Positions 1,956-64,000 of a stretch of 64,000 bases of DNA are shown in pieces (positions within the stretch are counted from its first letter, which is position 1; each line of letters begins with the position of its first letter). The stretch covers positions 2,170,001 through 2,234,000 of the forward strand of contig NC_135259.1 of NCBI RefSeq assembly GCF_964204865.1, read 5' to 3'. The notes beneath the pieces are model-generated. The model worked only from the letters and a program-made list of their open reading frames with translations, had not been told where the DNA came from and ran no database searches. The position numbers and the translations under genes were made by a program. Origin of the DNA: Styela clava (taxonomy: Eukaryota).

Positions 1956-4333
1956 TTAAACAAATGGATTATTCAGACCTATGTAAGCAAAGCTTGGGCA
2001 CGCATTTACTCTAGTGGGCACGAGCTGCCCGTCAGTGTTATTTTTATGTTGAATGCTAGTTGAAACCAGTTTCTTTCCCATCATTGTTAAATCATACATT
2101 TTAGCCATACAAAACTTTACATGGTCGGGTTCACCATTAAAAGATTTGTTTAGACATCTTAATAACCTAGAATATATTAATGAAAATTGAAAATTCAATG
2201 TTGATGCCAATGTGCCCCGAACATATGTAAAATGGTTCGGATTTGATACAATCGGCCAAACACCGTCTTCAAAAAATGTTATTGTACTACCCGCGTAACA
2301 GTATTTCCAAGGAGACTGCAATGTCTTACACCATTTGGATATGTTCAAACATTCGTAGTAATCTAGAACGTCATTATCTCTAATTTTAATCAACTTGCGA
2401 CCGTGAATTATTTCTTGAAAACGATAATAGTGTGACAACGTGGAGGAGACATTTTCGTCATCAAAATCTTCAAATGGCGAGCAGGATGAACCTCCTTCTC
2501 CTTCATAGACAATCTCTATTATTGACCGAAGAGCAGATGACAGATCGGTCACTTCAAAAATAACTTCAGATATTTTGTCTAAATTTGGCGTAGACGTGCA
2601 TACACCACTATCATTAAGCGTCATATTACTCGATGATGCACTTAGAACTTCATTTCCATGAGCCTCTCCAAGTGGCGGAAAAGTCCCCATCGTTTGAGAT
2701 ACAGATTCAGCAGCACATTGTCTACTCTCAGCAGTGGACGCTCTTTTATACCAGTGCCTTGAATTCATTTGTTTCTTGGTATCTCCGGTGAATATGGTCG
2801 AGGTGACGTTTCGATTAGATTTGCTATCATAATCAGGTTCCCCAAGTACTCGGAGTTTTACACAAGATTCCAGCTGAGCCAGTTTTAAGGCTATCTTTGC
2901 ATAAAAGCCACCGACAGTATGCAAGTCCTCGTCATCAATTTGAGCCAGTTTTGAAGTAGCGAAGTCTCTTATATTTGTCCAAATTTTTTCTGTTGTAATA
3001 TGTTCTTTGCTCGTCGATGCTCCGCTCATTTCTTCATTCGAGTTCACTGAATGTTTCTTTTGTCCTTTACTCTCTTCATTTCTTAGAAATTTTCTCAGTA
3101 ATGCAGATAATCTTAAATTTCTTTCTGGTGATGAGTTTGTACGTTTTTCTGTTTCTGAAACCAATTTCCAAAGTGTAGCAATGTGACCGAGGAGCTGCAA
3201 AATATGATTTGACAATTGTCTACTTATCATCACAAATTTCCGCGACAGACTGGTGCATAGAAAATAATCCTCACTTAAAACATTGCCCATCACAGGCGAT
3301 ATATATATACACAGATATGTATATATATATTATAGATTAGAAGGTATAAATGAGGAAACTTCTCTCTATAATCTAGCAGCTGAATCTTATTATTTAATTC
3401 TGACGTTGAGTTTATTGGTGAAAATATCATGTACAAGTATACCTGTTTTTTTACCTTCGACCAATGCATACAATCAATTATTCGCACCTAAACTTTTACC
3501 TTTTTGCCTCTGTCATTGACGGGACGTTCAATAGCCGAGAAAATGTCCTTAACTGTTCCGATTGACATTGGTCCTAACGATAATACATTTCCTCTCGCAA
3601 GCCCGTAAATACCTCCCAGAGTTGGTGTTAAAGGATAACTCGGATTGTGAGATGTAAATTTAGGAATGCCTCCAATCTATTAACATATATAGTGTATTAC
3701 TGAAATTATGCATTGTGAGAAGTTCTATACGAAAGGGAATGCAGTGAATGATATTTACGGAATATGATTAGTTGTCAATTTGAAGAATGTATATATATCG
3801 CTGTTTCACAATGTTGATGGAGCACACAGTACTTCTTTTATGTTGGGATTTTCAACTCCATTTTTGCAATAATCCAAATTGCCCAAAGATCAATCTATTA
3901 TATAGTTTTTTCAGAATTTATCACTTTAATTGTAGTAGCTGATACACGAGAGAGAAGCTGGTCAGTTTTGGTCAGCTTCGAAAAACTATTGATAAATGAT
4001 TATGAAAAGAGATATTAGCAAATGAAATTACTGGATAAATAAATATGATCAATGAATATATTTGATATTTTAACTTGTAAGTGTACCGACATACCGAGTT
4101 TAAAAGATTACTGGCAAGAACCATGTGTCTCATCTCATCATTGACGGTTTTTTTCAAAATGTCCGCCACCTCTTTATTTCGACCACGCTCCCATTTTATA
4201 CTGAGCCAGGCCGTCAGATACGGCGGTATGACCGCAAACTCGAGGAAAAGTGCGTTATGTATATCCAGCTTCAGCTTTTCAATTTCTTCTTCAAGTGCTT
4301 TACTACTACATATGTTCTTTGAGATTTTTTTTA
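1956..4333 (-). CDS. Ferritin-like (PF12902-type) C-terminal region of the VioB-like gene (exons 14-16)
   Basis: LEFAVIPPYLTA, EMRH, IERP, EGEG and SHYYRF motifs, typical of VioB/RebD-associated ferritin-like domains. Confidence 0.85.
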
Positions 4334-7300
4334 CTGAAATAAAAAATGCCAAAAATATCAAAAGTTTTATCTTTTATCAAATATATATTTTTCTTTCTGT
4401 AAAATTGCATTTGATTGATTGACATTTTGACGTTATATTGCACCATAAATATTTACAGTAATATTAATATTTTTTCTACATCAGGTAACAACTCTATGTT
4501 TAGATGGGATTAGTTAAACAATTTTGTTTCAGTTGCATATGTATTGAAGATTATGAAAAGGAGGGGAGCATATGCAAATATAGTATTAGGTGGTTTTTTA
4601 AATTTATACTATAACCACAAAAATGTGTATTTCCAAATATAACATTTACTCTCGATTTTGTTTCTAAAACACTCTTTGATAAAGGATTGAGTAATTACAT
4701 CATCATCACATTACCTTTTTGAGATTTACCTTCTTTCATGCCACATTTCATCCAATTCCAAATCAAACGTCTTTTACTGTAGGATAAATCGCGCTGTGTC
4801 GGCATGAACCTGAATAGATAATGAAGCAAAGTAGTTTTTAGTTGAAGTTACATTTGTACGCAGCGAACCAGCAGATACAGTCGCTATTTGTGGATGGTTC
4901 GAGCAATCTATTTTGCAACTTAACTTTATTCACTGGTTACTTTACTATACTTTCAATATTTGAAACAGTATATAATCTGCTCAATATACACTTATTATTT
5001 TATCGTTTTGGGTCATCCTGTACAATCGTATTGTTGTACTGTGTTCGTGAGCTGACAATAAAGACATTGCCTCGTTAAAGTGCCTGACAGACTGGGGAAT
5101 TAGTGCAGGCGCTACAGTTTCCATTTGTCGTCTTTGTTCGTGAGCTGACAATAAAGACATTGCCTCGTTAAAGTGCCTGACAGACTGGGGAATTAGTGCA
5201 GGTGCTACAGTTTCCATTTGTCGTCTTCTGACGACAGAGGAAACGTCTTCCTCCAAACAACAAATAAAACCCAAAAGATATTTTCTAGGCTACAACTGCA
5301 CCGATATATACATTACCAGGATTCGATTTGATTTGGCATTTGAAAAAGATTTACGAGCGAGAATGGACTATTTTATTTTCTGCCTTCAAAAATATTTCTC
5401 GTTCCAAATCATGAGCATGTTTTGGACAATAATCTCTGCTAGTGCTGTCTGATCAACAAGGTCAGTGGGAAATGAACGATGACCTCATGGGTTTCGAGAA
5501 CTGGTGTACGAGTAGGAATGTGGTATGCTTTTAAACCAACTCATATAATGTTTATGAACATTTGTTGCACATGTCATGTAACTTTTCTATGAAACAGAAA
5601 TTTCCTAGGGTTCCTACCTAGGGTTCTCCATATCGTACTCGAACATTGCCATTTTCAAAATGCGAGCTTTTGCTTTGACGTCTTCATAAGAATTCGTGTC
5701 GATTATCTTGTTTTTCCACATAACAGGATACAAATTATAATAAAGACGGAAAATATCTGTGATAATTATGGGGCATGTTTTTAAAACGTAAAAGGGGTAT
5801 TTCGTTTCTATTGTTTTTTCCAATTAAATTCAAATTATGGTAGAATAAAAAAGCTCGCGGTATAGTCTTACAACTTTATTGATTAACATTCCACTGAAAA
5901 AGTCACATACGAATAACATTTGTAGACATTTGTCAACATTTACCTTTTATATCCTGCCAAGTCGGACATTCGACATTTTCGACCTCATCATAAACCCTAG
6001 CAGCGATTGGTATAGAAGTAATATCAATATGGGATCCAGTGACTTCTTCATTTGAACCCTCTTCAAAAACATACGAGTGAGACTCGGTGCTGTGTCTAAT
6101 TTAAAAAATAAGAGTGAATCGATCGAAATCTGGTAGACTCGCTCTACATAATGTGGACATAATCAAAAATTTGAATGCAGAATAGTGAAAGAAACTTAGT
6201 AAAGAAAATAGAGAAGCTATGGAGATATTAGATGAATTTTTTATTGAATCCAAATCAGGTACTTCAGATGAGATGAAAATCTAGCGACATACCAACAAGA
6301 ACTGACTTTGAAAGTCTTGAACTACGCCTTTTTTCGGTGGTAATGAAGCTACATAAATGTGGCCCACTGTGCCAAAGGTGGCATGTCATGAGCTCGATCA
6401 TGGCACATGAATAATTTGGTGAAAAGTAATTCTTGTATTCATGATAAATCATATAACTCACGTTATATCGAAATAAACTTAAACTGTTCATTTAAACATT
6501 GCTATCTCGTAGCTGTGTTATCATTAATGAAAATAATATGTAAGTACACCAGACTACAGTAGCGAACGGTTAGGTAGATAAAACGTAATTTTCCTATTTA
6601 GCGTATATCGCAATATAGAGCAACTGCTCAAAATAGTCATGTGCATGTCGATGATTTGGAAATTGTAATGTATCATGGGTGTAACACACGAGCATCACAC
6701 TCAATCAAACACTGTGCTGAGGTAAAGGTAACGTTGGGGACTAAATCGTGACTATAGTAACGTGGTATAAAACACCCATTTTCATAAACTAGAACAATTT
6801 CTACTAGAGCTCAGATATTTAGGCGGTAAAATTTACCTTACTAAGATTTGTAAGGGATAAATCTGCCCATCTAATCCACATTGTCTTGGGGATCCGGGTG
6901 AGCGAACGCCATACATGTCAAAGTCAACGATTCCAGTTGAATTAGTAAACGGTTTTGTCCCAACAGGTGTTATTGAGAGAGCTGCCTCTGGCCATCCTAA
7001 AGTGCTGTGAATATTCATGAAACTGAATTTAATATTTAGAGAAAGAAATAGGTATAAACAGGTCCTACACAAAACATGTGTTTTCCTCCTAATCAGTGCA
7101 GCGAATTGTACTATCGGGGTTTATGTGATAATCTCTGTGAGATGCCTAAGTCTAAATTTAATCCATTGCCCTTGCAGTTTTTCATTAAATTTTTCAGCGT
7201 TAAATACAAATTATTATTTAAGAAAAGCTAAATTGTCGATATATATATCTTTATTTGTGTGTTTTTATCCAACGAGTTGAACAATTCGTGGATGTTTGAA

Positions 7301-10300
7301 GAAAAACATTCTTGGGATCGAAAACGTTTTCAGCAAAGGATTTTTACATAGTTCACAAAACGTGAGTTAGATGGTATTTTAGATTAAAGTCATTTTGTAA
7401 AATACTTTTTTAACGCATTATGCAATACATTTTTGAATTTTGTTTCTCATACCTGTTACAATGGAATGGACAAGCTCCCATTTTAATATGCTTCAAAGAT
7501 TTAACATTCACTTGTGATGCTGCAGACGGCATACCGAATCTGCTAACAAAAACTGATAAACGTTGTCTCTCACCCGGATTTATTCTGTGGACAGCTGGTC
7601 CCATAATACCGATATGCATACCAAACTTAGATTCCGTTAGTAATAGGTTCCAAGGTCTGTAGAAATGTTTGAATGTTATAAAAAATGGTTAGCCCTTTTC
7701 GCTGTATACATATTACTCCGAAATTTCGTATGACTTAATAAATATTTAGGTTGTACAATATTATAGCCTGTTTCATTTCATTCGAAGAGATACTATAGTA
7801 TATACTACTATATTGCTAAATATATATATAATATCGTCACGCTAATACCCGAATTGCGTAAGTCATTTTTAGCAGTTTTGAGAAAAACGTGAAAAACTTC
7901 CTAATGATATTGTTATGCCATTGAGAGTCAATAATTTGCCATGGTTCAATTTTTTTTTATCGTAGCCGGATTTAAGTTAATTTGTTTGACGCAGTTAAGT
8001 GACGTGATAATGGCGCACTGTGACTTAGGCAGAAATGTGTCTATGACTTGGGGACATACGCAATTATGCAACTTTAATATATGCACCAGTCCTGAAAACT
8101 AAACATTCCAAAAACGAATGTAATTCTCAGTATCTACTATGTCTAATCCCCAAAATAGCTAATCAGTTTCAATTACATTATTTTTTATGTTTAAAAGTAT
8201 ATATTTTATCAATATAACACGTTCTGCACACCCATCGAAATAAGACTAAGATTTAATATAAAGAATAAAACAGCAATGCACCCAATATAAAAGCCAACCA
8301 AAGTAAATTGGACTCGGTCGGACAGTGAATATCACAAGTGCACGTCTTCCCATACTGTAGTATAAATTCAAATTAATACGCGCTAAGCTAGAATCCGAGA
8401 TGCAAAAACTCGAAAATACTCCGCCGAGATTATTTTGCTTTTGTCACAATAGTCATGCGGTAACAATGATGATTCATTATGACAAAACAATTGCACAAAT
8501 GTGCATGTCATACTAAATCTCCATTTTTATAGGTTTCGGAATTTCTAAAATAAAATTTGAGTTAATAGACAGGTGCGCAGCATTACATAAATACCTATTT
8601 TATAAAAAACTCAAAATCGCCAAAAATGACTTACGCAATTCGGTTATTAGCGTGACGATATATAAGTATACTTATATATAAATATAAGTAAATAAATTGC
8701 CTATTTCTCCTGGAACATACTTGCTATCAGGATTTTTGTTTGACACAAGAACCAGTTGATTTTGCCGTAACAACTTCATCATTTTGTCGTCAACGTCTTT
8801 CAGACTTATATCAAAAACTCCGCCAAGCTTTTCATACCAATCAGCGCCTGCATTAATTCGCCTTGAAATCTCCCCATTGGTTGTCAAAAGATGCAAAGTT
8901 GTCCTGTCGGGTTCGTAATTCTTCAAACATAGCTCCGGAGACCAATAATATCTTTATACAAGTCGTCAAATTTGAAATGAAATAATTACAAAATCGAGCA
9001 CAAGTAAGTCAAATGTATATAACATAGTTATAATAATACCCCATTGATTACGCCACTATTATCACAGTCGTGGTTAATTACAGACATCTAGAATGCTTTT
9101 TGGCATTTATTTCACAAAAATCCTCACCTACAGGCATCTTTTGACTTAACTAGCACTCCAATATCAACAATCTTAGTTGTTTTAAATATTCCGAACTTAT
9201 CACATGTGATTGCGTTTGACATATCCATAGTCAAATACTTCTCTTTATAATGAACGAAAAACGGAGCAAAACCGACATTTTTCCAGCTATCTGCCCTAAT
9301 GACTCGTGTTGCGACTGTTTGAACCGGATCGTCATTTGACGTTAACCCTGAAATGCATCATTGAAATGCTAAAGGTATATTATTAACAAATAACCAAGTA
9401 CAGGGAACAAATAAATAGCATATATTCTTTGATTACATATTGGCGATATATTATAGAATAAAGATCAGGAAAATAAATACAGAGCGTAAAGTAGCAAACT
9501 AACAACAACATCGGGATCTTCACAATGTACGCACATTTGGGTATAACACACTAGCATGCTATATCCCGACAGAGTCAAATTATCATGACAAACCCATTGC
9601 CAATATAATATCGACATGCAGTGTGCTATGAATTGTTCCTGCATGATTCTGAATAACAGAAGATTAAACATTTGAAATATCCTGATAAAATGTTGCACTT
9701 ACCTATTGTTCCAGTTATTCGCCCCCGGGTGAGATCGAATCTAAACTGATCCAGAACAAATGAGATCGACAGCTCTGTGACGTTATTAAACATATGCTTG
9801 TAATGATTGCTGAACCATTTGATATTTGATAACCTACTGTATAAAAACAAAAAACAGTTGGAACAACGAATTACATTTAAATTTTTTTGTCCTGAAACAT
9901 ATTATTTTATCAGATGGAAATTTGATTTTCCAGGAAAGATTCTATGTTATATAAATCGTGAACACTGTAAAACTACTGATGTTGCCTGCTGTTAAAATAG
10001 TACTGCCATGTTACGGCTACTACTCTGAAATTATAAATGGACACTGTGCTACGACATAGTCTATCGCAATCCCCTGTATATATTTATATATCCCAGGCTT
10101 GTTACAAAATACAATGTACAACATGTACGAAAGAAGGTATTATGAATCGTTATCACATTCCCTTATTGCTTTAACATGATTGTTAATTGGTGAATACAGT
10201 CGGAGACATATGTAGCATAATAACACAAAATTAACATAATTTGGATGAATATCCAGGCGATTCCAAGCAGAATGTTTGACGAACCACAAAGTTTTTTTTT

Positions 10301-13300
10301 TGCAACCGAACAAATACGAGAAAAACGTATATAGCATACACACTGATGTAACACCAATGAATACAACAATGAATTATCTAGAAGAATACAGTGAACATGT
10401 GTGAACTATCATATCTGAGAACACCAAGAGGTAAATTGCGCCGGTAATTAAATTGAGTACTGTAATTTATAATGTAGTTCGATTAAACCGTTGCATTTTG
10501 AGGGTACTTTGCATTTGATGAGGACATTTGTACCATAAGTAGGTAAGAATACTTTGGTGATACAGAAATCTCTATTTTGAAAGTCTTTGAAAGTAAAAGA
10601 TGCACGCATTATAAATATTATTGTGATATTTGATCCCCTTAACACTATGCAAACCTAATAATATGTATTGTCTAAATTTTGTAGACATTTGCAAATACTC
10701 GTGTCAAAGTCAAAACAATATTGATTGTATGAAGAGTTATGTGTGTGTAGTATGAAAGTGTATGTTTGTTAAGTGTAAGTTTTAACAATTTGAGTAGTTT
10801 GCTTTAGCTTGAATTCATCTTTTTCAGGAAATATGTTCGGTCAGCTCATCACAAATTTTTCGACCAATGATTAAATTCTGTTATACACAAAAATATCGAA
10901 CAACAAGAGTCAATTTTTGCAATATTCGTGGATGTCATGTTACCTTTTATAAGTTGTGCTTTTGCTCACATCACCAGAACTCCCAGCTAATCGTTTCCTC
11001 ATCTTCCTCATCGAAACTCTGGAATATTTCGCTTCCAGTATCCTTGGTATGATTATCGTGAAACCCCATATTTCAGATGCCTGTTGCCAATCAGGATCCA
11101 AGTCTACAATTACTGCCATTTCAGTTTCTGTTTGACGATAATTGTGGCGGTCATTAATTAACGTTTTATTAGCGCAGTCTATTAGGTGCAAAAAAATCGC
11201 TAGCGGGATAGAAGTTATACACATATTTATTTGTTGTTACACCAAATTTGTAGTAAAACTCGAGAGTGTTTTATTTATAATAAATAATTTGTTACATAGG
11301 AATTGATAGTCACGATATCGGACATTAATTAAAATTCTGATTGCATGTTTTGATTATTTGTTCAATACTTAATTTCAAAGGGAAAATTGCCGGGTTTCTC
11401 GTACCAAAAATGACAAAATGGAGCGTAGGGATTAATCAAATACAACCCACCACGGATTTTCATGTTGACTATTTTATCTGTCGTTGAACATTTCCCAGGT
11501 TTTTTGCAAATCGATGTCACTTTTGTATCGATAAAATACAAATGACCGCTGCCATCGGGATTCCAATTTCCGATCTGTTGAAGATAGAATTTTAAAATTC
11601 ATGTGGAGCCTGAAACTCTTGGGGGGTAAGACATATAATCTCAATGTAAGGAGTTCCATAGTGTGATCTCATGTTAAAACTATGTATTTCTCAATCGATG
11701 ATCGATATTTTTTTTTTATCTAGTCTTTAATCTTTGAGGTTATGTACGTGTTTGGAGTATTATAATCAAACATTTCCTTGTTCATCATTACTTGAGATTG
11801 CGAAATTATAAAATATCGCCACGCTATACCCCCGGTTTTTAACTAGCGGGCCATGGATAACTGCTGGGCCACAGAAACATTTGAGGTGGGCCACAAACCT
11901 ATAGAATATTTCTATTAGTATTGAAAAATTTGGTCTGATTTACGTCACTATGGTTAGATTTTAATTGTGGTAGCAATGAACGGTACTCTTTTTCATTCTA
12001 ATTATTAAGGTGAAAGTGTTTATTTTTGCGAAAGGAGATTTTATTTTACTTGTAGTTTATACCTTGCATAAAAAAGTTAATGTGTAACAGAATATTTAGG
12101 CTAAGAAAATGGGCCACGAAAAAAAATAAGATTGAGAACCAATGCGCTCGTCGATTAATGGCAAAAAATGACAGTGCTAATTGAACATTTAATCACAAAT
12201 CCTTCACTGTGCGTTCAAAAAACTGGAAGTTTACTGGAAGTTTTTGATAACTCGAACTCCGAGGAATCCAGCTGGTAATGACTATTTCATGCTTTGACAA
12301 AACTTTGTATGTGAGCTTTCATGCACCCGCACCAGCTACCATTCCATGTCGGTGGGAAAAGTGAACTACTTATTCGTTTCAGATGCATGGATGGTGGAGA
12401 TGTTGATCTGAAGATGATCTAAAGATTGGACATGTTTGGAGTACGATAACTAGTATCAGACTCTTAAATTACTTATGACAAGCAAGTTCAACACTTTTCT
12501 ACAATTATCTACCCCCCATCTCCAAATATTGGTTTAATACTCTATACGTTTACATTCCAAATGAAAATACGGCTAGGAATCCTCTAGAATTTTGGATAGC
12601 TAGGATACAAGTTTTACTTACGTTTTTCGAAGCGGAGGCAGTAAGAAACTGTTTTGTGTCATAGTTACATCGATTGTTATTCACGGTTGATACATCTAAT
12701 ACTAGTTTTCCATGAAAATGAATTCGCGGCCATGAAAGATAGCCTGCATTAAAAAGACATTCTAATTTAATTTTTTTGATTTTAGTAAAAATTGCGTTCA
12801 TGCATGTTTTTACTACATGAGTCAGCTCATGACGTTGATTTCGTCTTTCATTCATGCACTGACATCACGCAATCAATCGAACACCTAAGGAAGTAAACTT
12901 AACTTATATCAATATAAATTCTTGATTGCTTTAGGTAATTGTCCCCTTTTTCCGTTTCCTTTTTCTATAATTTTTACCAAGATCTGTTTTTAATATTTGC
13001 GTACAAAACATCTTCCTTATATGCTTTCATTGAATAGAACAGTGCTATAGGTGTATATAACAGGGTTCAAACCATAATATGCTAAAAAATGAACAATCCA
13101 ACATCGCGATCCCCTTTTCCAGTCAAAATGCTACAGGTATTTCGAATAGCAGTGGGTCTTTAAAGTTCGTTAATTAATTTTAATTGTTAAAACGGAAAAA
13201 AGATGAATAATTACTTGGACAAAACTGGAACATGCAAGGTCGCTGTTCTTCTTTGGTCACTTTGCAGAATGATGTGGGATATTTGCAGGTTTTTCTCCAT

Positions 13301-13872
13301 CTAGTTTGAGATCCGCGTCCACACGTCACACTGCAAGAAGACCACTGGGTCCATGAAGGTTCTATTGGATTAAATAGAAATATTCTCAAGCTCCGAAAAC
13401 GTAGTCTGTTGTTTATAGTTTAAATTAACCTTTCCAGAAAGGATACAACTGATGTTCTCGATTTACGATAATCTGTCAATACTAATATCAAGTCCATTCG
13501 CCGACTTGGACTAGGAAAATGTTCGTTTAGTTTCAGTCGATATCATACACAGAGAAAGCGACAAAACTGGCCTCCGTTGTCATTTGTGACTTCCATATCA
13601 GAAAGCCATACTATTTGTGCTTGTATTTTTGAAACAACTACCATAAAAACTCTCGCGAGCTACTCGCGAAAAGATAATTTTTTTTTACGTTCAACCTCGA
13701 CATTATTTCTGAAAAGAGTCCCATTATTAAATTGCTGTGACATTAGAACTGACCAGAAACGGTCTCGTTCTGTAGTAAGCATAGTGTAAATTTAATATTA
13801 CTTACCAAGAACAGAAGCCGTGCAAATTATTGGAAATAAAACCAGACAAAGCAGAAACGACGATGAATTCAT
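1956..13872 (-). CDS. Secreted TSP1 + VioB/RebD/StaD-like (chromopyrrolic acid / imino-arylpyruvate dimer synthase family) protein with C-terminal ferritin-like domain; 16 coding exons, ~1213 aa
   Basis: Manual model with all GT-AG introns, consistent phases and no internal stop. Exons: 13872-13806, 13361-13215, 12743-12622, 11574-11451, 11127-10944, 9836-9703, 9347-9128, 8951-8721, 7656-7453, 7004-6837, 6095-5944, 5756-5618, 4809-4715, 4333-4095, 3676-3500, 3194-1956 (3642 nt). Motifs occur in the order I recall for bacterial VioB-like proteins: SYLSWPRIHFHG..DVSTVNN, WNPDGSG, VIVDLDPDWQQASEIWG, LSISFVLD..GRITGTIG, PGSPR..LDGQIY, PTWQDIKDIF..YYNLYPVM, PRFMPTQRDLS..KR..IWNW. The ferritin-like part follows: LEFAVIPPYLTAWLSI, DEMRHM..NLLNSIGG, FSAIERP, TVGGFY, VTDLSSA..EGEG, SHYYRFQEI, FNGEP. 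Confidence 0.85.
5043..5226. repeat. Tandem duplication of a ~93-bp unit in intron 12; possibly a LINE 3'-end remnant
   Basis: Two near-identical copies starting at 5043 and 5136. The minus-strand translation ALIPQSVRHFN resembles the C-terminus of LINE ORF2 (weak). Confidence 0.7.
7832..8660. mobile_element. MITE with ~40-bp TIRs in a TA-rich site (Tc1/mariner-like), intron 8 of the VioB-like gene
   Basis: TATCGTCACGCTAATACCCGAATTGCGTAAGTCATTTTT ... AAAAATGACTTACGCAATTCGGTTATTAGCGTGACGATA. Confidence 0.8.
13215..13361 (-). CDS. Thrombospondin type-1 repeat exon (phase 1-1)
   Basis: WTQWSSCSVTCGRGSQTRWR..C..C..EEQRPC..C canonical TSP1 motif, bounded by AG and GT. Confidence 0.9.
13806..13872 (-). 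CDS. Signal-peptide exon of the VioB-like gene (MNSSSFLLCLVLFPIICTASVL)
   Basis: ATG at 13872, hydrophobic core, and a phase-1 GTAAG donor. A TTTTTAG acceptor about 14 nt upstream of the ATG suggests a 5'UTR intron or a trans-splice site. Confidence 0.7.
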
Positions 13873-22579: not shown

Positions 22580-25331
22580 AGTGGCGAGCACCTACCGGTA
22601 TTCCGGTTAAGTCGTACTGCTGCAAATTGACGAGCAAGCGCCAGGATTGGAAAGTCACACGATTTTTTGATAAAAAGTTCATGATGTCACACCGAAGAAA
22701 GAATTGCGACCTTGAACGCACGAAAATATGGGATAAAATTGTTGAGATGGAAACCGAAAACAAAGAAATTAAAAACACAAATAAAGAAATTGAAGTTAAA
22801 AATAAATCACTGGAAGCTGAAAAAAAGAACTGGCTAGACAACTGCAAGATGCTTTGTCTCAACTGAAAGTAGACAAGACCAGTGTTATACAACTTGAAGA
22901 AAGAGATTTTGGCATGAAGGAAGCACTCGAACGAGTGATATGCCGTCTGGAGAGCATTGATGAGGCCATGGCTGAGGGTGAGGTGCCATCATTTATTCAT
23001 AAACCTATTTTGAAAACAAACCCTTGAGGTGCCTAAGAGTGTTGATAAGAATGGTGAACCAGACTGCTCTGATAATGAATGTTTGATAGATGGTACCGGT
23101 ACTATTAAAAAATTGAATTTTGCTGATGAGTGTGTGGTTGACCAGTCTACACCTATGTATGCAAGTGTGAATAGTAATATTACTGATTGCAACGCAGTTC
23201 CTTTTGGTATGAATCATAGTATGAGAATTGATATACAGCCTGATACTTTTAATGGTGATGGTATGTCTTTGGATGATTATTTGTGTCATTTTTCATCCAT
23301 TACTACCTGTAATGGATGGACTGATAAAATCGCTGGTGTACACTTTGCTGCATGTATGCGTGGGAAGGCTTTGTCCTTGTTGAATGAATTATTCCTTTCA
23401 TATAGGCACAGTTTGAGTGTTGCAGTGAATCACTTGAAAAAGCGTTATTATCCAGACGGTAGGGAGTCATACTTTGCTACTTGTTTAATAACAGGAAGAA
23501 GTTGGCCACTGAGACGTCAACGGAATATGCTACTTCTCTTCGTGCATTGTCAAGGAAGGCTTATCCTTCTTTGGATGTTATTGCTTGTGAGAATCTGATT
23601 AAGCAGCGTTTCATTTCAGGTTTTCCTGATTTCGAGATGTGTAAGACTTTGACCATCAGGCAGACTCAGAGTTTGGATGAATTAATTACTGTGGCTGATG
23701 TTTGTCATTCTATTGATGCTACGCACAGTGCACCTGGTTGTAATCGTGATAGTAAGCCCATGGTAGCTGTTGTGAATAATTCTGACTGTGATGATGGTGT
23801 GTGTGAATCTGACTTTAGTAAGCTGCGGAATGATATTAGGGAGATGCTTGACTGTTTCCGTGCCATGTTTGACAAAGGTCATCAACCCCGATTTTCCCGT
23901 CAGACGGGTGGGCGTAGGAATAAAGGTATTACTTGTTATGGTTGTGGTGCCAAGGGTCACATACGTAGGAATTGCCCGGAGAACCTGTGCCAGAGATGTC
24001 ATGGCAGAGGTCATATAGCTTCTCAGTGTGATAGATATTATGTTCCACAGAATTCGCAGCCTTCTACTGCGTATTCGGCCCAGCAAATGGCCAATGGCTC
24101 AGTAGGAAATTTTTCAGCAGGGAATAGCTCAAATTCTGCCTGTGGTGGGAATGGCCAAACTCGTGAGAGTGGGAATATTTCCCAGTTTCACCCTGCTCTC
24201 AAGAATATTGATATGCCTTTAAACAGAAATCAGTAGCACGGGGGTCCTCAGCTGCTACTGGAAAAATGACGAATTTATGCAAGGACCAAGACTTTGATAA
24301 TTTGATTTGTTCTTTAAGATTACCCACTAGCTGGTATGCTATGGTGGATGTGGATGGCATTACCGTACGTTTTCGTATTGATTCTGGTAGCGCTGCTACG
24401 CTTATAGATTATGCAGTTTTTTGTTCTATTGGTGGAAAGGAGTGTGATTTGTCTCCTTGTGACGTTTGTTTTCAAAGTGCTAATGGAACTTCTCTGAAAG
24501 CTCGTGGTATGATTGACTTGAAAGTTTGTATTGATTCTGTGTGTGCTGTTCAGAGAGTGATTGTTGCTGATCTCCGTGCCCCCTATGGTTTGCTTGGTAT
24601 GGATTATTTCCAAAAGCATGACTGTGTTTTGCATATGTCTGTAGGTCAAATGGAAGTTGATGGTAAAACTGTTTCCCTGACTAAGCCTGTTTCGTCTGTT
24701 CCTAGTTGTAGAATTGTTGTAGATAAATGTGTGACTGTTCCCAGAGAGAGTGAGATGGTGATTTATGGTCGTTTGAATTGCCCGTGGACATCCAATAGTT
24801 AGGTCACAGCTGTGGCAGAAGCTGCGTGTGTGTTTGAGAGCGAGTATGGACATCGTGGTTTATTTTTATTCCTTGGAGTGGTGGCCGCCTCATGCTCTCT
24901 AGTGCCTCTCATGGTGATCAATGTTAGCAAGGAAGCGGGAGAAATACCTGCGGATTTGCTGATCGGTTTACTATGCCCAAGAGAAAACCTGACTGTCTCT
25001 TCTCTGGAACAAGTGGTGCTGGGTGATGTCATGGACACCAGGGAACTACCTTAAACATTTAAAGAAGCTCGTCGACGACCCAGAAGATTTAACGGAAGAA
25101 CAACGTCACCGTGTTCATGATTTGCTTGTCGAATTTCAGGACGTTTTTGCTGGTCCTGATGAAAAACTGGGACAAACTTCTGTAGTCAAACATAAGATTA
25201 AAACGTCAACATCTGAAGCTTTTGAATTTGCTCGAGAACAGTTAGGTAAATCTGCTGTTCGACAGAAACGTAATTTCAATGCAACTATTAAGCCTTTATC
25301 TTTTAATGTTGGTGATCTTGTGTGGTATTTT
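22580..25331 (+). mobile_element. Decayed Gypsy retrotransposon: gag (two CCHC knuckles), aspartic protease and an internally deleted pol
   Basis: Gag 23029-24236 with a frameshift near 23480; CYGCGAKGHIRRNC and CQRCHGRGHIASQC; protease FRIDSGSAATLI (24266-24802). The pre-RT linker LGQTSVVKHKIKT is joined directly to the integrase C-terminus RQKRNFN..FNVGDLVWY. Confidence 0.85.
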
Positions 25332-28300
25332 CAGCTTGGGCATTTCCTCTTGGCCATAACGGAGTTTTTTCTGATGATGAATTCCACAGTAGTCAATGAA
25401 TCTTTCAAATCCGTGTCCTTGAAATAGTGTTCCATTATTTGTCTTGAGCACTTCACAAAATCCAGGTGTAGCAAATATTTTGTCAAAAATTGGAACCACA
25501 CTGCCAGCTGATTTTTTATGTAGTCTTCCACCATTGAGTCAATATTAGGGAACCACAATTTTGCTCTAATCAATGCTTTTGTTTCAGCAACTCCTTGATG
25601 TCCCTCATGTGCTATGGAGATCATTTGTCATCTTCACAGGAACTACATGAGGAACTACTACTCTCATGTGCTATGGAGACCTTTCTCATCTTTACAAGAT
25701 GTCACAATACAATGTCCACGAAGAATCATGCCTTGTTCAGTTATGCTCAATTCACTAAATAAACTTTCAAAATTTCGCATTTATTCACGGTTTCGATAAT
25801 CTTGCCGTTTTCCAGAAACATTACACTTCTTCACATTTTGCATCACGGGGTCATTGAAAGTCTCTCCTTCTATTTCTTTCTGTGCGATAGCTTTTGGACA
25901 AGCACTTTCACACACATAGTTCAGAAATTCTTCTGCAATTTTCAGATCACGGTTATTCTCTGCTTTCGATGGATGACGTGACAAATAATCTGCTGGATTA
26001 TTCGCTCCGGGTCTGTATATTACAGCATAATCATATTACTGTAGCTGTAAACACCATCTTTCTATTCTAACAGACGGCTTTGCAGTGACATTCAAAAATA
26101 TACTAATCAGAGGTCTGTGGTCAGTAATAACATTGAATTTTACTCCATATAGGTACAAGTGAAAATGTTCAACTTCTCAACGAACAGCCAGTGCTTCACG
26201 TTCGATTTGAGAGTAACGAGTTTTTACGTCATCAAGACTTCTTGATGCATAGGCAACAACTTGTACTTTTCCACTTTTTGAGCTTCTTTGTGTCAAAATT
26301 GCTCCTATTCCCAATGATGATCCATCTACAATTAATTCAGTCTTTAGATCAGGATCAAAATATGACATAATGGTGTCAATTGTTAATTTTTTCAACTTCA
26401 ACCAGGCACTTTCACATTCATCACTACAGATGAAATCAGAATTTTTATTTGTCAATTCCCTCAGTGGCTTCACATGGATTGCTGAATCTTCAACGAATCT
26501 TGAAAGATATCGTGCCATCCCCAACAAAAACTTCACTTGTGATTTATCTGTAGGTCTCAAAGCTTCTTTGAGTGCTTTAAATTTTTTTGGATCAGGAGAC
26601 ACTCCACGTTCACCAAAAATATTACCATAGAACTCCATATATGATTTAAAAAACTCACATTTTCTTTAATTCATCTTAAGACCATTTTTTGACTCGGTAT
26701 AAGCATGCTCTGATATGCTTCTCGTGATCAGCATAATTTTTGCTAAAAATATAGATGTCATCAGAAATATTCTTCACGCCTTCTAGTCTTTGAAGAACTT
26801 GTTCAATTATGAATTGGAATTTTTAGTCGCTGCATTCACCCCGAAATTGAGACGATTATGTCTATGAATCCCAAGGTGTGTACTAAACGTTGTAATATAT
26901 CTGCTGTCTAGGTGTAACTCTATTTGATGATATCCTCGGTTTAAATCGAATTTTGAAAATACCTTGCATCCATTCAAGTCGTGAATTAGTTCATCCATTG
27001 CTGGCATTTGAAGGTTCACCCTTTTGATAGCTTTATTCGCAGCTCTCATATCCGTGCACAATCGGATATTATCAGGATCACTGGATTTTGGTACCGCAAC
27101 TATAGGAGATACCCACGGAGTTGGTGTGTTATCTTCACAGATATCCTTTTCATATAGTCCTTTAATTGCTTTTTCCACTTAGGTTCTGGTTTTAAATGTT
27201 ATTCTTCTGTGTTTTTGATGTACTGGATCCACAAAGTCATCGATGTTCAGCTTTAATTGGTATCCTTTGAGCTTTCCGACACCATGACATATACTATCAT
27301 ACTCTGATAGAATTTCCTTTGTACGCTTTTCTCGTTCATTTTCAATGGAATATATAATCTCCAGTATTCCGAGTTGTTTTGCTGTGCCATTAGACATTAA
27401 ACAACCTGTGGCATGTTTTGTTACATAAAAATCATCTGACAGTTGGTGGCCACCATTTGACATTCCGTTTGCAGCAAATTTGCCAATTTACTGCAGTGGT
27501 TTTTCACTACCATAAGCAAATAACTTTGTATCAGCAGGACATAGTGAGTGCAACATTTGGAAGTATTCCTCCGTATTTCTTGATACGCTTTGTTGTCTAG
27601 GATATTAACACTAGAACCACTGTCAACAATAAAACAGCATTTAATCCCATTAACATTCAATTCAACTGTTGGAAGCTTTCTAGAAATCTGAATTTGTTCA
27701 ACCTTGATTGAGTATTCAGAATTTTCACAACTTTGAGATTCAACTTTAATTATGTTGCTTGAGCTTGATTTCAAATTATTAAGTGAGTGTGAAAACTCCT
27801 TTTGTTTTGGCGCCCTACAAAACTTTGCAAAATGACCACAATCATTGCACTTGAAACATTTTCGCCCCTTAGCTGGACACTGACCTTTGTGTGGTAACGA
27901 GCCGCCACAATAAAAACAAATTTTTACTGAGTAATTGTTTTTCTTGCGTGTTTTGTTTCGGTTCACTGATTTGATCCGATGCGCATTTTTCTTGTGCAGT
28001 TTCTTCAGTGTTTCCTTCCATCACAGACAAGTGGGATTTTGCAAGTTCAATTGCTTTACCAGTGTCGGATAGGGATTTTGAATCCATCTTTTTGCTTAAA
28101 GATTTTTTCTATAATTCAGACGATTTGCATCCCTGAATTATTTGAATTTGATTTCACTTTTCCGGGATCGAACTCACAGGTTACTGCCATTTTCTTAAGT
28201 CGTGTACAAAATTGATCGAGTGACTCACATTCATTTTGTTTTGCGAAACAGATGAATTTCGTACTCGCTATTGGCTTTAGGGGCAAAATATTACGTCAAG

Positions 28301-37644: not shown

Positions 37645-40600
37645 GTATTGCCAGAGCAAACTTGGAAGTTTCGGGTAAGTGATTATAATTTACCCTGAAA
37701 GACCATATAGATATGCGCTGCGGGTACTATTACTCATCCTTCTTCTATGTGCCTGTAGATTCGTATACATATAATAAAAGGAAACTATTTATAGCAAGAT
37801 TAGAGATAACTATTCTAACTGTTTTCTGACTATAGTTAAATTATGTATGTCTGAGGAAGTTACAGAAACGTTACAGTAATATATTTGTGTTAGTGTTAAA
37901 TCATTTAGAAGCAACTTTTGAATACATGACTAGAAAATTAGATGGTAGATGTAGAGAGCCTTCTTCATCAATTTTTTTCGATGTGAAACGTTTACATGCC
38001 AAACTTTTATATTGTACCAATTTACCAAATCGTGTATGTTTTTGTTTTTGTTAATTTATTAAATATTTTAGATATATGTGTGGTTTTTATGTGATATTGA
38101 TCGAGACAGTACATACCTTCACTTCTGATTACGCATAACAACTTGATGCAAATCTGTTGTTTAAAATATTCCGAAAAAATCGCTTCTAAATTAAAAAATT
38201 CCGAGTTTTTGTAAATTTTCTCTAATTGTTTTTATTAAGACATTCGATTAACTGGTGGAAAAACCGAAAATCAAGGTTTTGTAGAAATTCTTTCTGGCGG
38301 AAGATGGGGTAGAATATGCGTCGACGACTGGGGAATCGAGGAGAGTGCAGTTGTCTGTCGCATGCTAAATTTTAATCGATTTGCTAACCTTTCCGTCGAT
38401 GCAACCGATCCTGGGACGCCTTTTGTTTATACCAATGGTTTGCAGTGTGTGGGTACGGAGACAAGACTGACCGATTGTACCATAGATTTATTAAAAACTT
38501 CTAGTTGCTCGATTGCAATAGTCAAGGTGTTTTGCTCAGGTGAGGTATTATAGTTTTAGCTGAATGACATAATAGAATACGTTTTAGCTGATTTAACGTA
38601 ATAGAATACAGGAAGTTAGGAATGAATCATTTGCCTTTCTAATCCTATCGTTCAGCGTTGAATAATAACAACAACACAACACGCAAATCCAAATCCCAGC
38701 GGAAAAAGCTGGTGAAAAAATAAACGAGAATATCAGTGTGAATTCTGGCTATTGCACATGACAGAATGTTGCAAGGTTATACGTATGGAGTTTTTTTCCT
38801 AAAAATGTAAAATCGTGCAATAATATTCTCCTGAAGAATTCACGGATGTGGAAAGCCTACGGATGTGAAAGCATTGCATCATGTTATAGTCATATCGTTT
38901 CAAAAGATTGCTATGTTTAATAGTAACACGTTTTTAAATTTTAGAAATAGAGGATGTTCGTTTGTCTGGCGGATACAAACCAAACCAGGGTTATGTTGAG
39001 GTTAAATCAGAGGGCAAATGGGGACAACTTTGTTCCGCAAACTGGGGAGACAATGAAACAGAAGCAGTTTGTCGCCAGGTCGGATTTCAGCGAATTGGGA
39101 AGTCTCTTAAAGCAAAAATACTGACAAAATCAATATTACCTATTTTTTTAAACAACATTACATGTGCCGGTGACGAAACGGAACTTAGATTTTGTAATCA
39201 TGGATTACTTGGCGAATCCAACTGCACGAACAAGGAAAATGTAACTATTGTATGTTCGGGTGGGTATTTAATATAAATATAAAAATATTTCAATAACTTT
39301 TTTCAATATTTTGTAGCACAAAATTGATGCGATTGCGACATAATATGATAATGACGTAGAAAAAATTTCTGCTTGTTAGAAACATTCTACTCACTAAATG
39401 GGTAATCTTATATGAACCACACAAGTCAATTATCTTCGCCGGAATTCGAAACCCTTGAGCATACGACTCAGTTGCATATTTGAAGGGCATTAAAGTATTG
39501 GTTGTCTTTTTTTGACTTCAGTTAGAAATTAGCTAAAATTCCAACTGATTCCTATGACTGTCGTTACATTGCGAAGTGTAAAAACACATCGCCAATTTTT
39601 TTCGTGGGCATAGGGTCGACTGATTTTTTTTCTATTCTAGAAATTGAAAACGTGCGATTGTCTGGAGGAGACAAAATCAATCAAGGATACGTTGAAGTTC
39701 AATCTGCTGGAGAATGGGGGAAAATTTGCAGCAAGAAGTGGAGTGCAAAAGAAACAAAAGCTGTTTGTCGACACCTCGGATACGAGAGAATTGCATTCAT
39801 CCACGCTATTACAGTAGATCAACCTGCATCTCCGGGTTTCTTAGATAACTTAGAATGCGCTGGAAACGAAACAAATTTGAGGGATTGTCAACATCAATCA
39901 ATTGGGTTTTCTAATTGTAGCGAAAACAAAGAAAATGTGACTATTGTTTGTTCCGGTAAGTATTCATTAAAACATTTTTACTATATTTATTTCTACAGTT
40001 GGATACACTCAAAAAAATTGAATTACGATTTATTGCTTATTTTCTATTTCACAGAGATTGAGGCAGTGCGGCTCAGAGGAGGTCGATCAAGAAATCAGGG
40101 ATTTGTGGAAATACTGTCGGAAGGGGAATGGGGATTGGTGTGCGACAATGATTGGGGGATGTTAAATAAGGAAGTGGTTTGTCGTCAACTTGGTTATTAC
40201 AGAGTGTCCTTACTACCAGTGGCAGCTACTCAACCAAATTCATCCGTATTCTTGGACAACATATCATGTACAGGGAAAGAGAATCATCTTAGAAACTGCA
40301 CGCACGGAAAACTCACTACGTCAAGCGACTGTACTAACAAGCAGTGGGCAAAAATTGTATGTACAGGTACAAGCTTTTTACTGATCACAACAACATTTAT
40401 TAATGGTAGCCTCGATTTTTCTTATTAGATCATACAGCTGACGATTAGACTTCTATGACGAGATGAATGCCTCAATGTTATTAAATTAAATTATTTGATT
40501 TAAAATTATTTGGTTCTATAAGTCTGAATGTTTTCAATGCCACAAATTTAACTAAAATTCTTATGCTCATCAGATTCGATCAGCGCTGGACCCGGCGTTG

Positions 40601-53300: not shown

Positions 53301-53764
53301 AGATATTCTGAACCTGGATAATTATTTCATACATTGCCGGTACGCTACACACATTTAAACTGATATGCCTTTGTGTGCCTTCTCATATGCATGTCCAAAT
53401 TTCCTTTTAGCTTGAACTTCGTTTTGCAAATCCTGCAGTGAAATCTCTTTTCGTTTGTATGCGTGATAGAATGTGTGGTCAAATGAGATTTGCGTCCAAA
53501 TTCCCGTTGACATATTTCACACTCGATTTTTTTTGAATGACTTTTCATATGATTGCAAAGAATCTTTCCTGGCTGCTTGGGAAAATGTGATCCTAAATGT
53601 TCTTGAAAATGCTCTTTGCGGGTATATCTCTTGTCACGAATTACACATTTATGTGGGCGTTCACCAGTATGTGTTATTTCGTGTCGCTTTAGGTTGCCTT
53701 TCTGTTTAAACACTTTACCACAGAAATTACATTCATGCAATCTGTCTACTTTGGTCTTCTCCAT
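50353..53764 (-). pseudogene. C2H2 zinc-finger gene (~270 aa) disrupted by an LTR element
   Basis: Two halves (53764-53350 and 50763-50353) with HTGEKPF/HTGERPH linkers. Removing the insert and one TSD copy restores in-frame ...YQFK-CEICGVGK... Confidence 0.85.
50764..53349 (+). mobile_element. Young non-autonomous LTR retroelement (LTRs 50764-51552 and 52561-53349; ~1-kb internal region with protease remnants)
   Basis: 789-bp TG...CA direct repeats; 4-bp TSD CACA; PBS-like TGGCGAGAGC just after the 5' LTR; PPT AGAAGAGGGGGG before the 3' LTR; internal FLIDTGAGV protease motif; no RT or integrase. Confidence 0.95.
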
Positions 53765-63079: not shown

Positions 63080-64000
63080 CTGTTAAACCAAAATAAATTC
63101 AAAATCGAATAATCGAAACATTCCAATTCGAAATTCGATTCAAAAATAAAATATTCGAAACTTACATCCCTACTAATAACAAATGATGTGCAAAACAAAG
63201 GGCGGTCGTGAGGATATTTTCGCTTTATGTAGCTAATTTTAGCGATTCGCAAATTCGAATATTTGGTTCGCTTGGACAGCCCTAATTAACACTCAAAACT
63301 GATTTACAAGTCATGAACTTGCGAAGAAATAAATATGACGGATGATTATATTTGAAAAAGTAGCAAAATCTGAGAATTTTTCCTGTGAATGAAACAGCTA
63401 TGTTGAACAGTAGGGATGAGTAATTCAAAATATCAAATCCGCATCAGAGTTCTCCTGAAAATCAAGATGTGAACCACAAAACAGACGCCGTTATATGCTT
63501 TAATTAAATAATCTAATTAAATAATTTAATACAAACAAACTAAACAAAAAACTTTGTGCGTAACAAGAATTAATTGGGGAGAACCTAAAGAATATGTATT
63601 GAGTTTCCGTCGACCTAGAGTCCATTTATGTTATGTTATATTATGCTTCATTTGTTCAGGTCTAATAGGTCCTGCTACGGATTTGCGTTCCCATTTTTTG
63701 TACCCTACTGTTTGCCGTGAAAGTGTATGATGGAAATCCAAATTTAAAAAACAATACGTAATTACTACTTACTAGGACTGATAATTTTAGTGTCATTACT
63801 TTAACCGTTACCCAAGCAAAATTGCCTGATATCTAAAGTAGAATCGAAGATAATGAGGAAATAAATCACAACCACCCTCAGTTTTATCTGTAAAATATAT
63901 TTGGCCAAAGAATTTGGAAAAAAGGGACTGAGTTTGACATCCATAGCATGCTTCACTATGAAAAACAAGCATGAACCAGATAACAAATTTTAAATTACAA

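What the first reader, a model, noticed from the sequence alone, without database searches (positions are those of the whole stretch)
1956..13872. Intact, intron-rich animal gene encoding a bacterial-type VioB/RebD/StaD-like bisindole-coupling enzyme
Seen: 16 GT-AG exons splice into one stop-free 1213-aa ORF. The ORF track shows it only as unrelated fragments. Over about 1140 aa it carries, in order, the motifs of the VioB-like N-terminal region (PRIHFxG..STVNN, WNP, VDLDP..SEIWG, GRIxGTIG, PTW..YPVM, MPxxRDLS..KR) followed by the ferritin-like domain. Established: VioB (violacein), RebD (rebeccamycin) and StaD (staurosporine) are ~1000-aa bacterial heme enzymes that oxidatively couple two indole-3-pyruvate imines. 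Inference: this is an old horizontal transfer that gained about 13 introns inside the enzyme body and is still under selection, since every exon keeps frame while neighbouring elements are decayed. The introns and flanking animal genes argue against bacterial contamination.
Basis: partly seen in the sequence, partly recalled or inferred. Interest (0 to 1): 0.95.

Follow-up and report, generated by a model that had tools for sequence, protein, structure and literature searches.

The report
Secreted VioB-superfamily gene in a sea squirt
This is a real, intact 16-exon sea-squirt gene for a secreted protein distantly related to the bacterial pigment enzyme VioB; it belongs to an unstudied family that corals, acorn worms, amphioxus and sea squirts appear to have inherited from a common ancestor, not to a recent bacterial transfer.

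Summary
On the minus strand, 16 exons with GT..AG borders (13872 to 1956) join into a stop-free 1208-aa frame. It is identical to the RefSeq protein Styela clava LOC120338016 isoform X2, named "uncharacterized".

The protein has a signal-peptide-like start, one TSP1 repeat on a phase 1-1 exon, about 580 aa of beta-rich region and a PF12902 ferritin-like domain.

An authentic VioB, taken from a vioABCDE operon, aligns colinearly over 791 columns (hhalign probability 99.8%, E 6e-30, 18% identity). The "VioB-like" reading is therefore right at superfamily level. The nearest kin (27-30% identity) are an uncharacterised bacterial family, found fused (about 900 aa) or split into two genes, with no conserved amino-acid-oxidase neighbour.

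The transfer reading is not supported as written. Homologues occur in tunicates, amphioxus, hemichordates and stony corals. They form one clade (support 93/70; deuterostomes 99/98) that is not nested in the sampled bacteria. Most predicted proteins start with a signal-like segment, and several cysteines are conserved only in animals. All 15 intron positions recur in three Styela paralogues.

Function is inferred: an extracellular metal-dependent oxidase of unknown substrate. RNA support could not be obtained.

The parts
13806..13872 (-). Exon 1: ATG and a signal-peptide-like hydrophobic start (22 codons plus 1 nt); the donor is GT
   Evidence: Mean hydropathy of the best 10-aa window near the start is 3.2. 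This is a heuristic; no signal-peptide predictor was run.
13215..13361 (-). Exon 2: one thrombospondin type-1 repeat on a symmetric exon (phase 1 on both sides, 147 nt)
   Evidence: Pfam TSP_1 E 2e-10, 41.1 bits against a cut-off of 21.6.
12622..12743 (-). Exon 3: start of the VioB-like body (SYLSWPRIHFHG..STVNN). It aligns to residue 2 of bacterial homologues and of VioB.
11451..11574 (-). Exon 4: WNP..G motif region
10944..11127 (-). Exon 5: VDLDP..SEIWG motif
9703..9836 (-). Exon 6: GRITGTIG motif
9128..9347 (-). Exon 7: beta-rich N region
8721..8951 (-). Exon 8: beta-rich N region. The older, low-quality RefSeq model P0001 lacks it.
7453..7656 (-). Exon 9: beta-rich N region
6837..7004 (-). 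Exon 10: PGSPR..LDGQIY motif
5944..6095 (-). Exon 11: ends with the PTW motif
5618..5756 (-). Exon 12: YNLYPVM motif in the helical linker
4730..4809 (-). Exon 13: FMPTQRDLSYSKRR motif
4095..4333 (-). Exon 14: start of the ferritin-like domain, with the E..ExxH helices (E689, E724, H727)
   Evidence: Pfam PF12902 E 4e-13; conserved columns
3500..3676 (-). Exon 15: middle of the ferritin-like domain (IERP, E787)
1956..3194 (-). Exon 16: a variable insert of about 100 aa, then the rest of the ferritin-like domain (GEG E1029, H1051, E1057) and the C-terminal region. The stop codon is at 1956-1958.
   Evidence: Pfam PF12902 E 1.4e-12. The acceptor TTTTGCAG before 3194 is shown.

Best explanation
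The stretch is the gene Styela clava LOC120338016. It has 16 exons and encodes a 1208-aa protein built of four parts: a signal-peptide-like start, one TSP1 repeat, a beta-rich region of about 580 aa, and a PF12902 ferritin-like helical domain.

Shown:
- The protein belongs to the same superfamily as the bacterial enzyme VioB and is colinear with it from VioB's first residues.
- It sits in a different subfamily. Its bacterial members are uncharacterised and occur either fused or as an adjacent gene pair.
- The animal members (stony corals, hemichordates, amphioxus, tunicates) form one clade in which most predicted proteins start with a signal-like segment.
- The TSP1 exon is found only in the tunicate members sampled.
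- All 15 introns predate the duplications that produced at least four Styela paralogues.

Inferred:
- The gene has been inherited vertically at least since the cnidarian-bilaterian ancestor and lost in several lineages. Its ultimate origin (a very old transfer, or shared ancestry) is open.
- It works as a secreted, disulfide-stabilised, metal-dependent oxidase. The ferritin-like domain carries the E, ExxH, E, E, H, E residues that are conserved from VioB to animals, and would hold the metal or haem centre. The beta-rich region would form the substrate or assembly scaffold. TSP1 would tether the protein to matrix.
- By analogy with VioB, StaD and RebD, the chemistry would be oxidative coupling of aromatic substrates outside the cell. 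The substrate is unknown.
For: Gene model: 16 GT..AG exons and 1208 aa, identical to P0203.

Domains: TSP_1 and PF12902, found exon by exon.

Authentic VioB: identified by operon context (418, 998, 438, 382 and 191 aa ORFs carrying Amino_oxidase, PF12902, FAD_binding_3 and VioE, the last at E 4.5e-102).
- hhalign of the family profile against it: probability 99.8%, E 6e-30, 791 columns.
- BLASTP of P0203 against it: E 2e-6, plus two further colinear segments.
- Against the bacterial family member P0040: E 7e-60 and 1e-25, 27-35% identity.

Distribution and names.

Trees:
- Quick LG+G4: animals 89, deuterostomes 97, bacteria 99 (SH-aLRT).
- Careful LG+G4: animals 93/70, deuterostomes 99/98, Cnidaria and each deuterostome phylum 100/100, bacteria 88/71 (bootstrap/SH-aLRT).

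Secretion: most predicted animal proteins (all corals and hemichordates, 8 of 10 tunicate and 5 of 7 amphioxus models) have a hydrophobic N-terminus, whereas bacterial proteins start at the PRLHF motif. Animals average 23 Cys against 7 in bacteria, and four Cys columns are conserved only in animals.

Conservation: 121 of 134 family-conserved columns are kept, including E724, H727, E787, E1029, H1051 and E1057, which VioB also keeps.

Intron positions: conserved in three paralogues at 39-52% identity.

Fold: AlphaFold2 model of the hemichordate homologue, pLDDT 83.5. Its helical domain matches the ferritin-like protein 3hl1, with TM-score 0.69 normalised to the target (sequence profile E 7e-19).
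Against: - No transcript evidence was obtained here.
- No member of this subfamily has a known activity, so the oxidase mechanism rests on remote homology and conserved residues.
- VioB, StaD and RebD are reported as haem enzymes (PMC10851217), and no haem ligand can be named from sequence.
- Support for animal monophyly is moderate (93/70). The better-fitting C20 mixture model did not finish.
- The outgroup branch is very long.
- Bacterial sampling was limited to the best 80 loci and the top profile hits, so a closer bacterial donor lineage could have been missed.
- Four unnamed ENA proteins of unknown origin fall next to the animals with weak support (59/8).
- Absence from vertebrates, echinoderms and protostomes is suggested but not shown.
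- Two tunicate and two amphioxus models lack the hydrophobic start. These are unchecked gene predictions, so their true N-termini are unknown.
Confidence: 0.72

Rival explanations
1. One reading: a bacterial VioB/StaD/RebD-type gene entered the tunicate (or a narrow animal) lineage by horizontal transfer, gained introns, and still couples two indole-3-pyruvate imines.
For: The architecture and motifs are shared with VioB. The family is abundant in bacteria. Its distribution among animals is patchy.
Against: The tunicate sequences sit inside a deuterostome clade (99/98), which is sister to corals. VioB is the most distant sequence in the set. No tryptophan or amino-acid oxidase lies nearby (nearest on this contig is about 10 Mb away). 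Bacterial kin lack that partner too. The protein appears to be secreted, whereas the substrate of VioB is a labile intracellular imine.
Confidence: 0.05
2. Several independent transfers from related marine bacteria into corals, hemichordates, amphioxus and tunicates.
For: The animal distribution is patchy. Support for a single animal clade is only moderate (93/70). Bacterial members occur in marine Bacteroidota and Pseudomonadota, including a tunicate-associated Aureibacter plasmid.
Against: The animals are recovered as one clade in both trees, and the sampled bacteria as another. Most predicted animal proteins share a signal-like N-terminus, and several Cys columns are conserved only in animals. 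Independent acquisitions would have had to evolve these repeatedly.
Confidence: 0.08
3. The protein is no longer an enzyme. It would be a secreted matrix or iron-binding protein that keeps only the fold.
For: It has a TSP1 module, many cysteines and large variable inserts in the ferritin-like domain. No activity is known for the subfamily.
Against: The Glu and His residues shared with VioB and nearly all family-invariant columns are retained: 121 of 134 in this protein, and 40 columns invariant across 27 animal sequences. Such strict conservation of polar residues is typical of an active site.
Confidence: 0.12
4. The model is an annotation artefact or a decaying pseudogene.
For: An older RefSeq model of the locus was flagged LOW QUALITY and lacked an exon.
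Against: The frame is open through 16 exons with canonical splice sites and is identical to the current RefSeq model. The exon structure is conserved in three intact paralogues.
Confidence: 0.03

Closest known systems
VioB (violacein pathway); by published description also StaD and RebD, the chromopyrrolic-acid synthases
   Same: It has the same two-part, colinear architecture, from the N-terminal PRxHFxG..T.N motif through YPxM and MPxxR(D/E)LSxxK to a PF12902 ferritin-like domain with the ExxH, GEG and H..E motifs. hhalign gives probability 99.8%.
   Different: Identity is only 18%, and VioB keeps 77 of 134 family-conserved columns against 121 for this protein. This protein is secreted, carries TSP1 and is cysteine-rich. 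It has inserts in the ferritin-like domain and no linked tryptophan oxidase or downstream genes. StaD and RebD were not sampled here.
Uncharacterised bacterial 'ferritin-like protein' family: fused (about 900 aa), or split into an N-domain protein of about 620 aa plus a PF12902 protein of about 350 aa
   Same: These are the nearest relatives: 27-35% identity over the full length, starting at the same N-terminal motif.
   Different: The bacterial proteins have no signal peptide, no TSP1 and few cysteines. They are found in at least nine bacterial phyla without a conserved gene neighbourhood. No function is known.
PDB 3hl1, ferritin-like protein CC_0557 of Caulobacter vibrioides
   Same: It shares sequence and fold with the C-terminal domain (profile E 7e-19; Foldseek E 7e-8, TM-score 0.69 normalised to the target).
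   Different: It is a stand-alone domain of about 300 aa, lacks the beta-rich N region, and comes from structural genomics with no assigned function.
Uncharacterised paralogues and orthologues in Styela, Ciona, Clavelina, Branchiostoma, Ptychodera, Saccoglossus, Glandiceps and stony corals. UniProt's automatic name for some is 'Iminophenyl-pyruvate dimer synthase domain-containing protein'.
   Same: They belong to the same clade. The tunicate members share the same exon structure and the signal-peptide-plus-TSP1 front end.
   Different: Non-tunicate members lack TSP1. None has been studied. No paper was found that mentions these genes.

Membership tests
VioB/StaD/RebD imine-dimer (chromopyrrolic acid) synthases | Protein of about 1000 aa with a colinear N region followed by a PF12902 ferritin-like domain | tested here: met
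   Pfam on the exons and on VioB; hhalign over 791 columns
VioB/StaD/RebD imine-dimer (chromopyrrolic acid) synthases | Significant sequence homology to an authentic member | tested here: met
   hhalign probability 99.8%, E 6e-30; BLASTP E 2e-6; HMM hits on the VioB ORFs of nine Chromobacterium genomes
VioB/StaD/RebD imine-dimer (chromopyrrolic acid) synthases | Groups with the characterised enzymes and not with another subfamily | tested here: not met
   VioB is a long-branch outgroup. The animal proteins group beside the uncharacterised family. Identity is 18% against 27-30%. StaD and RebD were not sampled.
VioB/StaD/RebD imine-dimer (chromopyrrolic acid) synthases | Genomic linkage to an FAD-dependent tryptophan oxidase (VioA/StaO/RebO) and downstream pathway genes | tested here: not met
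   There is no PF01593 match in the window, and the nearest on the contig is about 10 Mb away. Amino_oxidase is not among the common neighbours of 125 bacterial flanking genes. Linkage is not expected in animals, so this test counts for little.
VioB/StaD/RebD imine-dimer (chromopyrrolic acid) synthases | Haem b cofactor and coupling of two indole-3-pyruvate imines | not testable with these tools
   The property is taken from the literature (PMC10851217). It needs purified protein.
Pfam PF12902 Ferritin-like | Score above the curated cut-off of 22.3 bits | tested here: met
   50.2 bits and 48.4 bits on two exons; also precomputed on P0203
Uncharacterised fused or split 'N-domain plus ferritin-like' family | Full-length alignment from the PRLHF motif to the C-terminus, with the family-invariant columns retained | tested here: met
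   121 of 134 columns are kept; BLASTP E 7e-60 plus 1e-25; phmmer domain coverage
Secreted TSP1-repeat proteins | TSP_1 domain above cut-off, preceded by a signal peptide | tested here: met
   TSP_1 scores 41.1 bits against a cut-off of 21.6. The signal peptide was judged only by hydropathy; no dedicated predictor was available.

The most novel reading that the evidence does not exclude
Invertebrate deuterostomes and corals themselves encode a secreted VioB-type oxidative coupling enzyme. It would build diaryl-pyrrole or bis-aryl scaffolds (the lamellarin, ningalin or chromopyrrolic-acid type of chemistry usually credited to symbionts), or cross-link aromatic residues in the tunic or matrix. 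This would be the first animal-encoded enzyme of this class.
Probability: 0.12. Interest if true: 0.85.

Novelty: new variant of a known kind. Interest (0 to 1): 0.58.

Why it matters
VioB, StaD and RebD are known only as bacterial enzymes that make bisindole pigments and drug scaffolds. This work shows that a sister branch of the superfamily exists in animals and has the features of a secreted protein. It has multiplied in tunicates, amphioxus and corals, and no paper found here mentions it. That yields a concrete enzyme family to test for oxidative aromatic chemistry in marine invertebrates, where many aromatic alkaloids and cross-linked matrices have unknown makers. It also corrects a tempting horizontal-transfer story. 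The gene looks bacterial only because its sole characterised relative is bacterial. The tree and the shared derived features point to long vertical descent within animals.

Tried and rejected
Searches that found nothing useful:
- NCBIfam on ten exon pieces: nothing relevant.
- PDB sequence search with the last exon: nothing. Only the family profile found 3hl1.
- ESM Atlas with the last exon: no usable hit. With P0109 it returned only bacterial PF12902 clusters, which did not settle where the four unnamed ENA proteins come from.
- Plasmid tblastn to fetch a named VioB: it found only the uncharacterised family, as gene pairs. VioB was finally reached through a Chromobacterium locus and a genus-wide genome search.
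- Pfam tally of 125 bacterial neighbour genes: no conserved partner.
- Literature searches for VioB in animals, PF12902 and the LOC identifiers: nothing on these genes. The horizontal-transfer compendium has no supplement held as text.
- The last two word-indexed protein searches added no new animal phyla.

Intron positions in amphioxus and coral genes, and the source of the unnamed proteins, could not be checked.

Analyses that did not finish:
- The C20 mixture-model tree did not finish in two runs. LG+G4 trees were used instead.

Steps left out by rule:
Exons were searched singly, by reference. Whole-protein work used the database protein P0203. A script joined the exons only to count length and stops, and to confirm identity with P0203.
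- P0203 is 8 residues over the folding limit, so a hemichordate homologue was folded instead.

Not attempted:
- dN/dS was not computed. No close orthologue DNA was available, and the paralogues are saturated.
Full report
**1. What is in the sequence**

The feature lies on the minus strand.

Pfam was run exon by exon, by reference. It finds:
- a thrombospondin type-1 repeat at 13180-13389 (E 2e-10);
- the two ends of the PF12902 ferritin-like domain, in 3975-4373 (E 4e-13) and in the last exon (E 1.4e-12).

NCBIfam and a PDB sequence search gave nothing.

An exhaustive HMMER search with the last exon found P0001, an older Styela clava model. It also found homologues of 1000-1300 aa in other tunicates, amphioxus and a hemichordate. 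A later search returned P0203, Styela clava LOC120338016 isoform X2, 1208 aa.

With P0203 as a guide I fixed the exon borders:
- there are 16 exons;
- all 15 introns are GT..AG;
- the CDS is 3627 nt, giving 1208 aa with no internal stop;
- the translation is identical to P0203.

The window is therefore Styela clava, 2.17 Mb into a 22.5-Mb contig, and the gene is already annotated as "uncharacterized".

I sent no joined model to any search or folding tool. Whole-protein analyses used the database protein P0203.

**2. Is it VioB-like?**

I needed an authentic VioB to test the claim, and obtained one in four steps:
- I scanned bacterial genomes with the profile.
- That scan included a Chromobacterium locus.
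- I searched that genus.
- In nine genomes I found an open frame of about 1000 aa that matches the profile in colinear pieces.

In genome G020 this ORF is 998 aa. It sits in the order 418 / 998 / 438 / 382 / 191 aa, with Amino_oxidase, PF12902, FAD_binding_3 and VioE (E 4.5e-102). That is the vioABCDE operon.

| Comparison | Result |
|---|---|
| hhalign, A1 profile against this VioB | probability 99.8%, E 6e-30, 791 columns, profile 63-976 against VioB 1-934, 18% identity |
| BLASTP, P0203 against VioB | E 2e-6 over 590-758, plus colinear segments at 1009-1058 and 72-95 |
| BLASTP, P0203 against bacterial protein P0040 (917 aa) | E 7e-60 and 1e-25, 27-35% identity |

In a 131-row alignment, P0203 keeps 121 of 134 strongly conserved columns and VioB keeps 77. 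So the protein is a true, full-length homologue of VioB, but it belongs to another subfamily.

**3. The subfamily in bacteria**

It is widespread: Actinomycetota, Bacteroidota, Acidobacteriota, Chloroflexota, Pseudomonadota, Myxococcota, Verrucomicrobiota, Planctomycetota and Cyanobacteriota. It occurs either as one protein of about 900 aa, or as an adjacent pair of an N-domain gene (about 620 aa) and a PF12902 gene (about 350 aa).

Some Chromobacterium genomes that carry vioB (G020, for example) also carry copies of this family.

A Pfam tally of 125 flanking genes shows no conserved partner and no amino-acid oxidase of the VioA type. LodA-like quinoprotein oxidases occur twice. A paper had noted PF12902 genes beside fungal lodA-like genes (PMC4417212). 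No function is known.

**4. Evolution in animals**

Named homologues come from the following groups:
- tunicates: Styela, Ciona, Clavelina;
- amphioxus: several Branchiostoma species;
- hemichordates: Ptychodera, Saccoglossus, Glandiceps;
- stony corals: Oculina, Desmophyllum, Montipora, Orbicella.

The Styela genome has at least five loci.

I built trees from 67 sequences and 920 columns, rooted on VioB. Support values are bootstrap/SH-aLRT for the careful tree and SH-aLRT alone for the quick tree.

| Clade | Quick LG+G4 | Careful LG+G4 |
|---|---|---|
| All animals | 89 | 93/70 |
| Corals (5 named corals plus 2 unnamed proteins) | 100 (named corals alone: 92) | 100/100 |
| Deuterostomes | 97 | 99/98 |
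| Hemichordates, amphioxus, tunicates (each) | 100 | 100/100 |
| Sampled bacteria | 99 | 88/71 |

Four unnamed ENA proteins of unknown origin stand beside the animals with no real support (59/8).

Derived features mark the animal clade:
- Most predicted animal proteins have a hydrophobic, signal-like N-terminus: all corals and hemichordates, 8 of 10 tunicate and 5 of 7 amphioxus models. Bacterial proteins begin at the PRLHF motif.
- Animals average 23 cysteines against 7 in bacteria, and four Cys columns are conserved only in animals.

TSP1 is confined to the tunicate members sampled. It sits on a phase 1-1 exon, the usual signature of exon shuffling.

All 15 intron positions recur in three Styela paralogues of 39-52% identity. 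Two of those paralogues group with Ciona genes (99). The introns and the front end therefore predate the Styela-Ciona split.

Together this is what vertical descent from at least the cnidarian-bilaterian ancestor, followed by losses, would look like. A still older transfer between domains cannot be excluded and was not tested.

Caveats:
- the outgroup branch is long;
- only LG+G4 trees are available, because the C20 runs did not finish;
- bacterial sampling is limited;
- absence from other phyla is not demonstrated.

**5. Likely mechanism (inferred)**

An AlphaFold2 model of the hemichordate homologue has mean pLDDT 83.5 and pTM 0.77. It shows three parts:
- an all-beta region (residues 50-470);
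- a helical linker carrying the YPVM and MPxTRDLS motifs;
- a helical bundle (563-932).

The bundle matches the ferritin-like protein 3hl1. The beta region matches only generic beta-sandwich arrays.

The polar residues conserved from VioB to animals are E724, H727, E787, E1029, H1051 and E1057 in P0203 numbering. All lie in the ferritin-like domain. This suggests a metal centre there.

The characterised relatives are described as haem-containing enzymes that couple two tryptophan-derived imines (PMC10851217).

I therefore favour a secreted, disulfide-stabilised, metal-dependent oxidase that acts on aromatic substrates outside the cell and is tethered to matrix by TSP1 in tunicates. The substrate is unknown.

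No amino-acid oxidase is linked to the gene. The genome does hold a tandem cluster of such genes on another contig.

**6. Verdict**

- The gene is annotated but unstudied, and no paper found here mentions it.
- It is best filed as a new, secreted animal variant of a known enzyme superfamily.

Noticed in passing
L056, L080-L109 (Chromobacterium genomes G001-G020): Some Chromobacterium genomes that carry vioB (G020, for example) also carry copies of the closer, uncharacterised family, mostly as an N-domain plus ferritin-like gene pair. G016 also has a fused 906-aa form. The two subfamilies therefore coexist in one genome.
   Followed up: partly
G000:C17:9729000-9794200 and G000:C17:6253432-6254718: There is a tandem cluster of at least six Amino_oxidase (PF01593) genes on another contig of the Styela genome. 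A separate full-length match lies in a 997-aa open frame with no intron across the matched stretch. Neither is linked to the VioB-like genes.
   Followed up: no
L040 and L057 (Pyrinomonadaceae): Each locus has two gene pairs of the family about 2 kb apart. In the second pair the order is reversed (the ferritin-like gene first, then the N-domain gene), and it is much more divergent (E 1e-35 for the N-domain).
   Followed up: no
Bacterial loci; PMC4417212: LodA-like quinoprotein amino-acid oxidase genes flank the family in 2 of 125 neighbours. A 2015 paper noted PF12902 genes beside fungal lodA-like genes. This is a weak hint of a link to amino-acid oxidation.
   Followed up: partly
window 23029-27966: Fragments of LTR-retroelement genes lie on both strands: gag with a zinc knuckle, aspartyl protease, and reverse transcriptase with RNase H. 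They are split into short ORFs, so they are probably decayed copies.
   Followed up: partly
window 39604-40428: One open frame holds two SRCR domains (Pfam E 4e-45). It is presumably exons of a scavenger-receptor-type gene on the plus strand.
   Followed up: no
window 50353-50748 and 53345-53764: C2H2 zinc-finger ORFs lie on the minus strand. They sit in a stretch (50-54 kb) with raised GC (0.40) and a strong AT skew (-0.21 to -0.22).
   Followed up: no
window 62728-63252: An ORF has a weak match to the end of Peptidase_M28 (E 1e-4). It may be an exon of a neighbouring gene that runs off the window.
   Followed up: no
window 4981-5274 (intron 12): A direct duplication of about 33 codons is visible as a repeated peptide in an intronic ORF. 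It is probably a short tandem repeat inside the intron.
   Followed up: no
P0001 against P0203: The older RefSeq model of this locus is flagged LOW QUALITY. It lacks exon 8 and is only about 93% identical to the current model. This points to assembly errors or a divergent haplotype in the earlier assembly.
   Followed up: partly
NZ_AP025306.1 (Aureibacter tunicatorum plasmid): A bacterium whose species name suggests a tunicate association carries the split gene pair on a 615-kb plasmid (39% identity to P0040). It was not placed in the tree.
   Followed up: no
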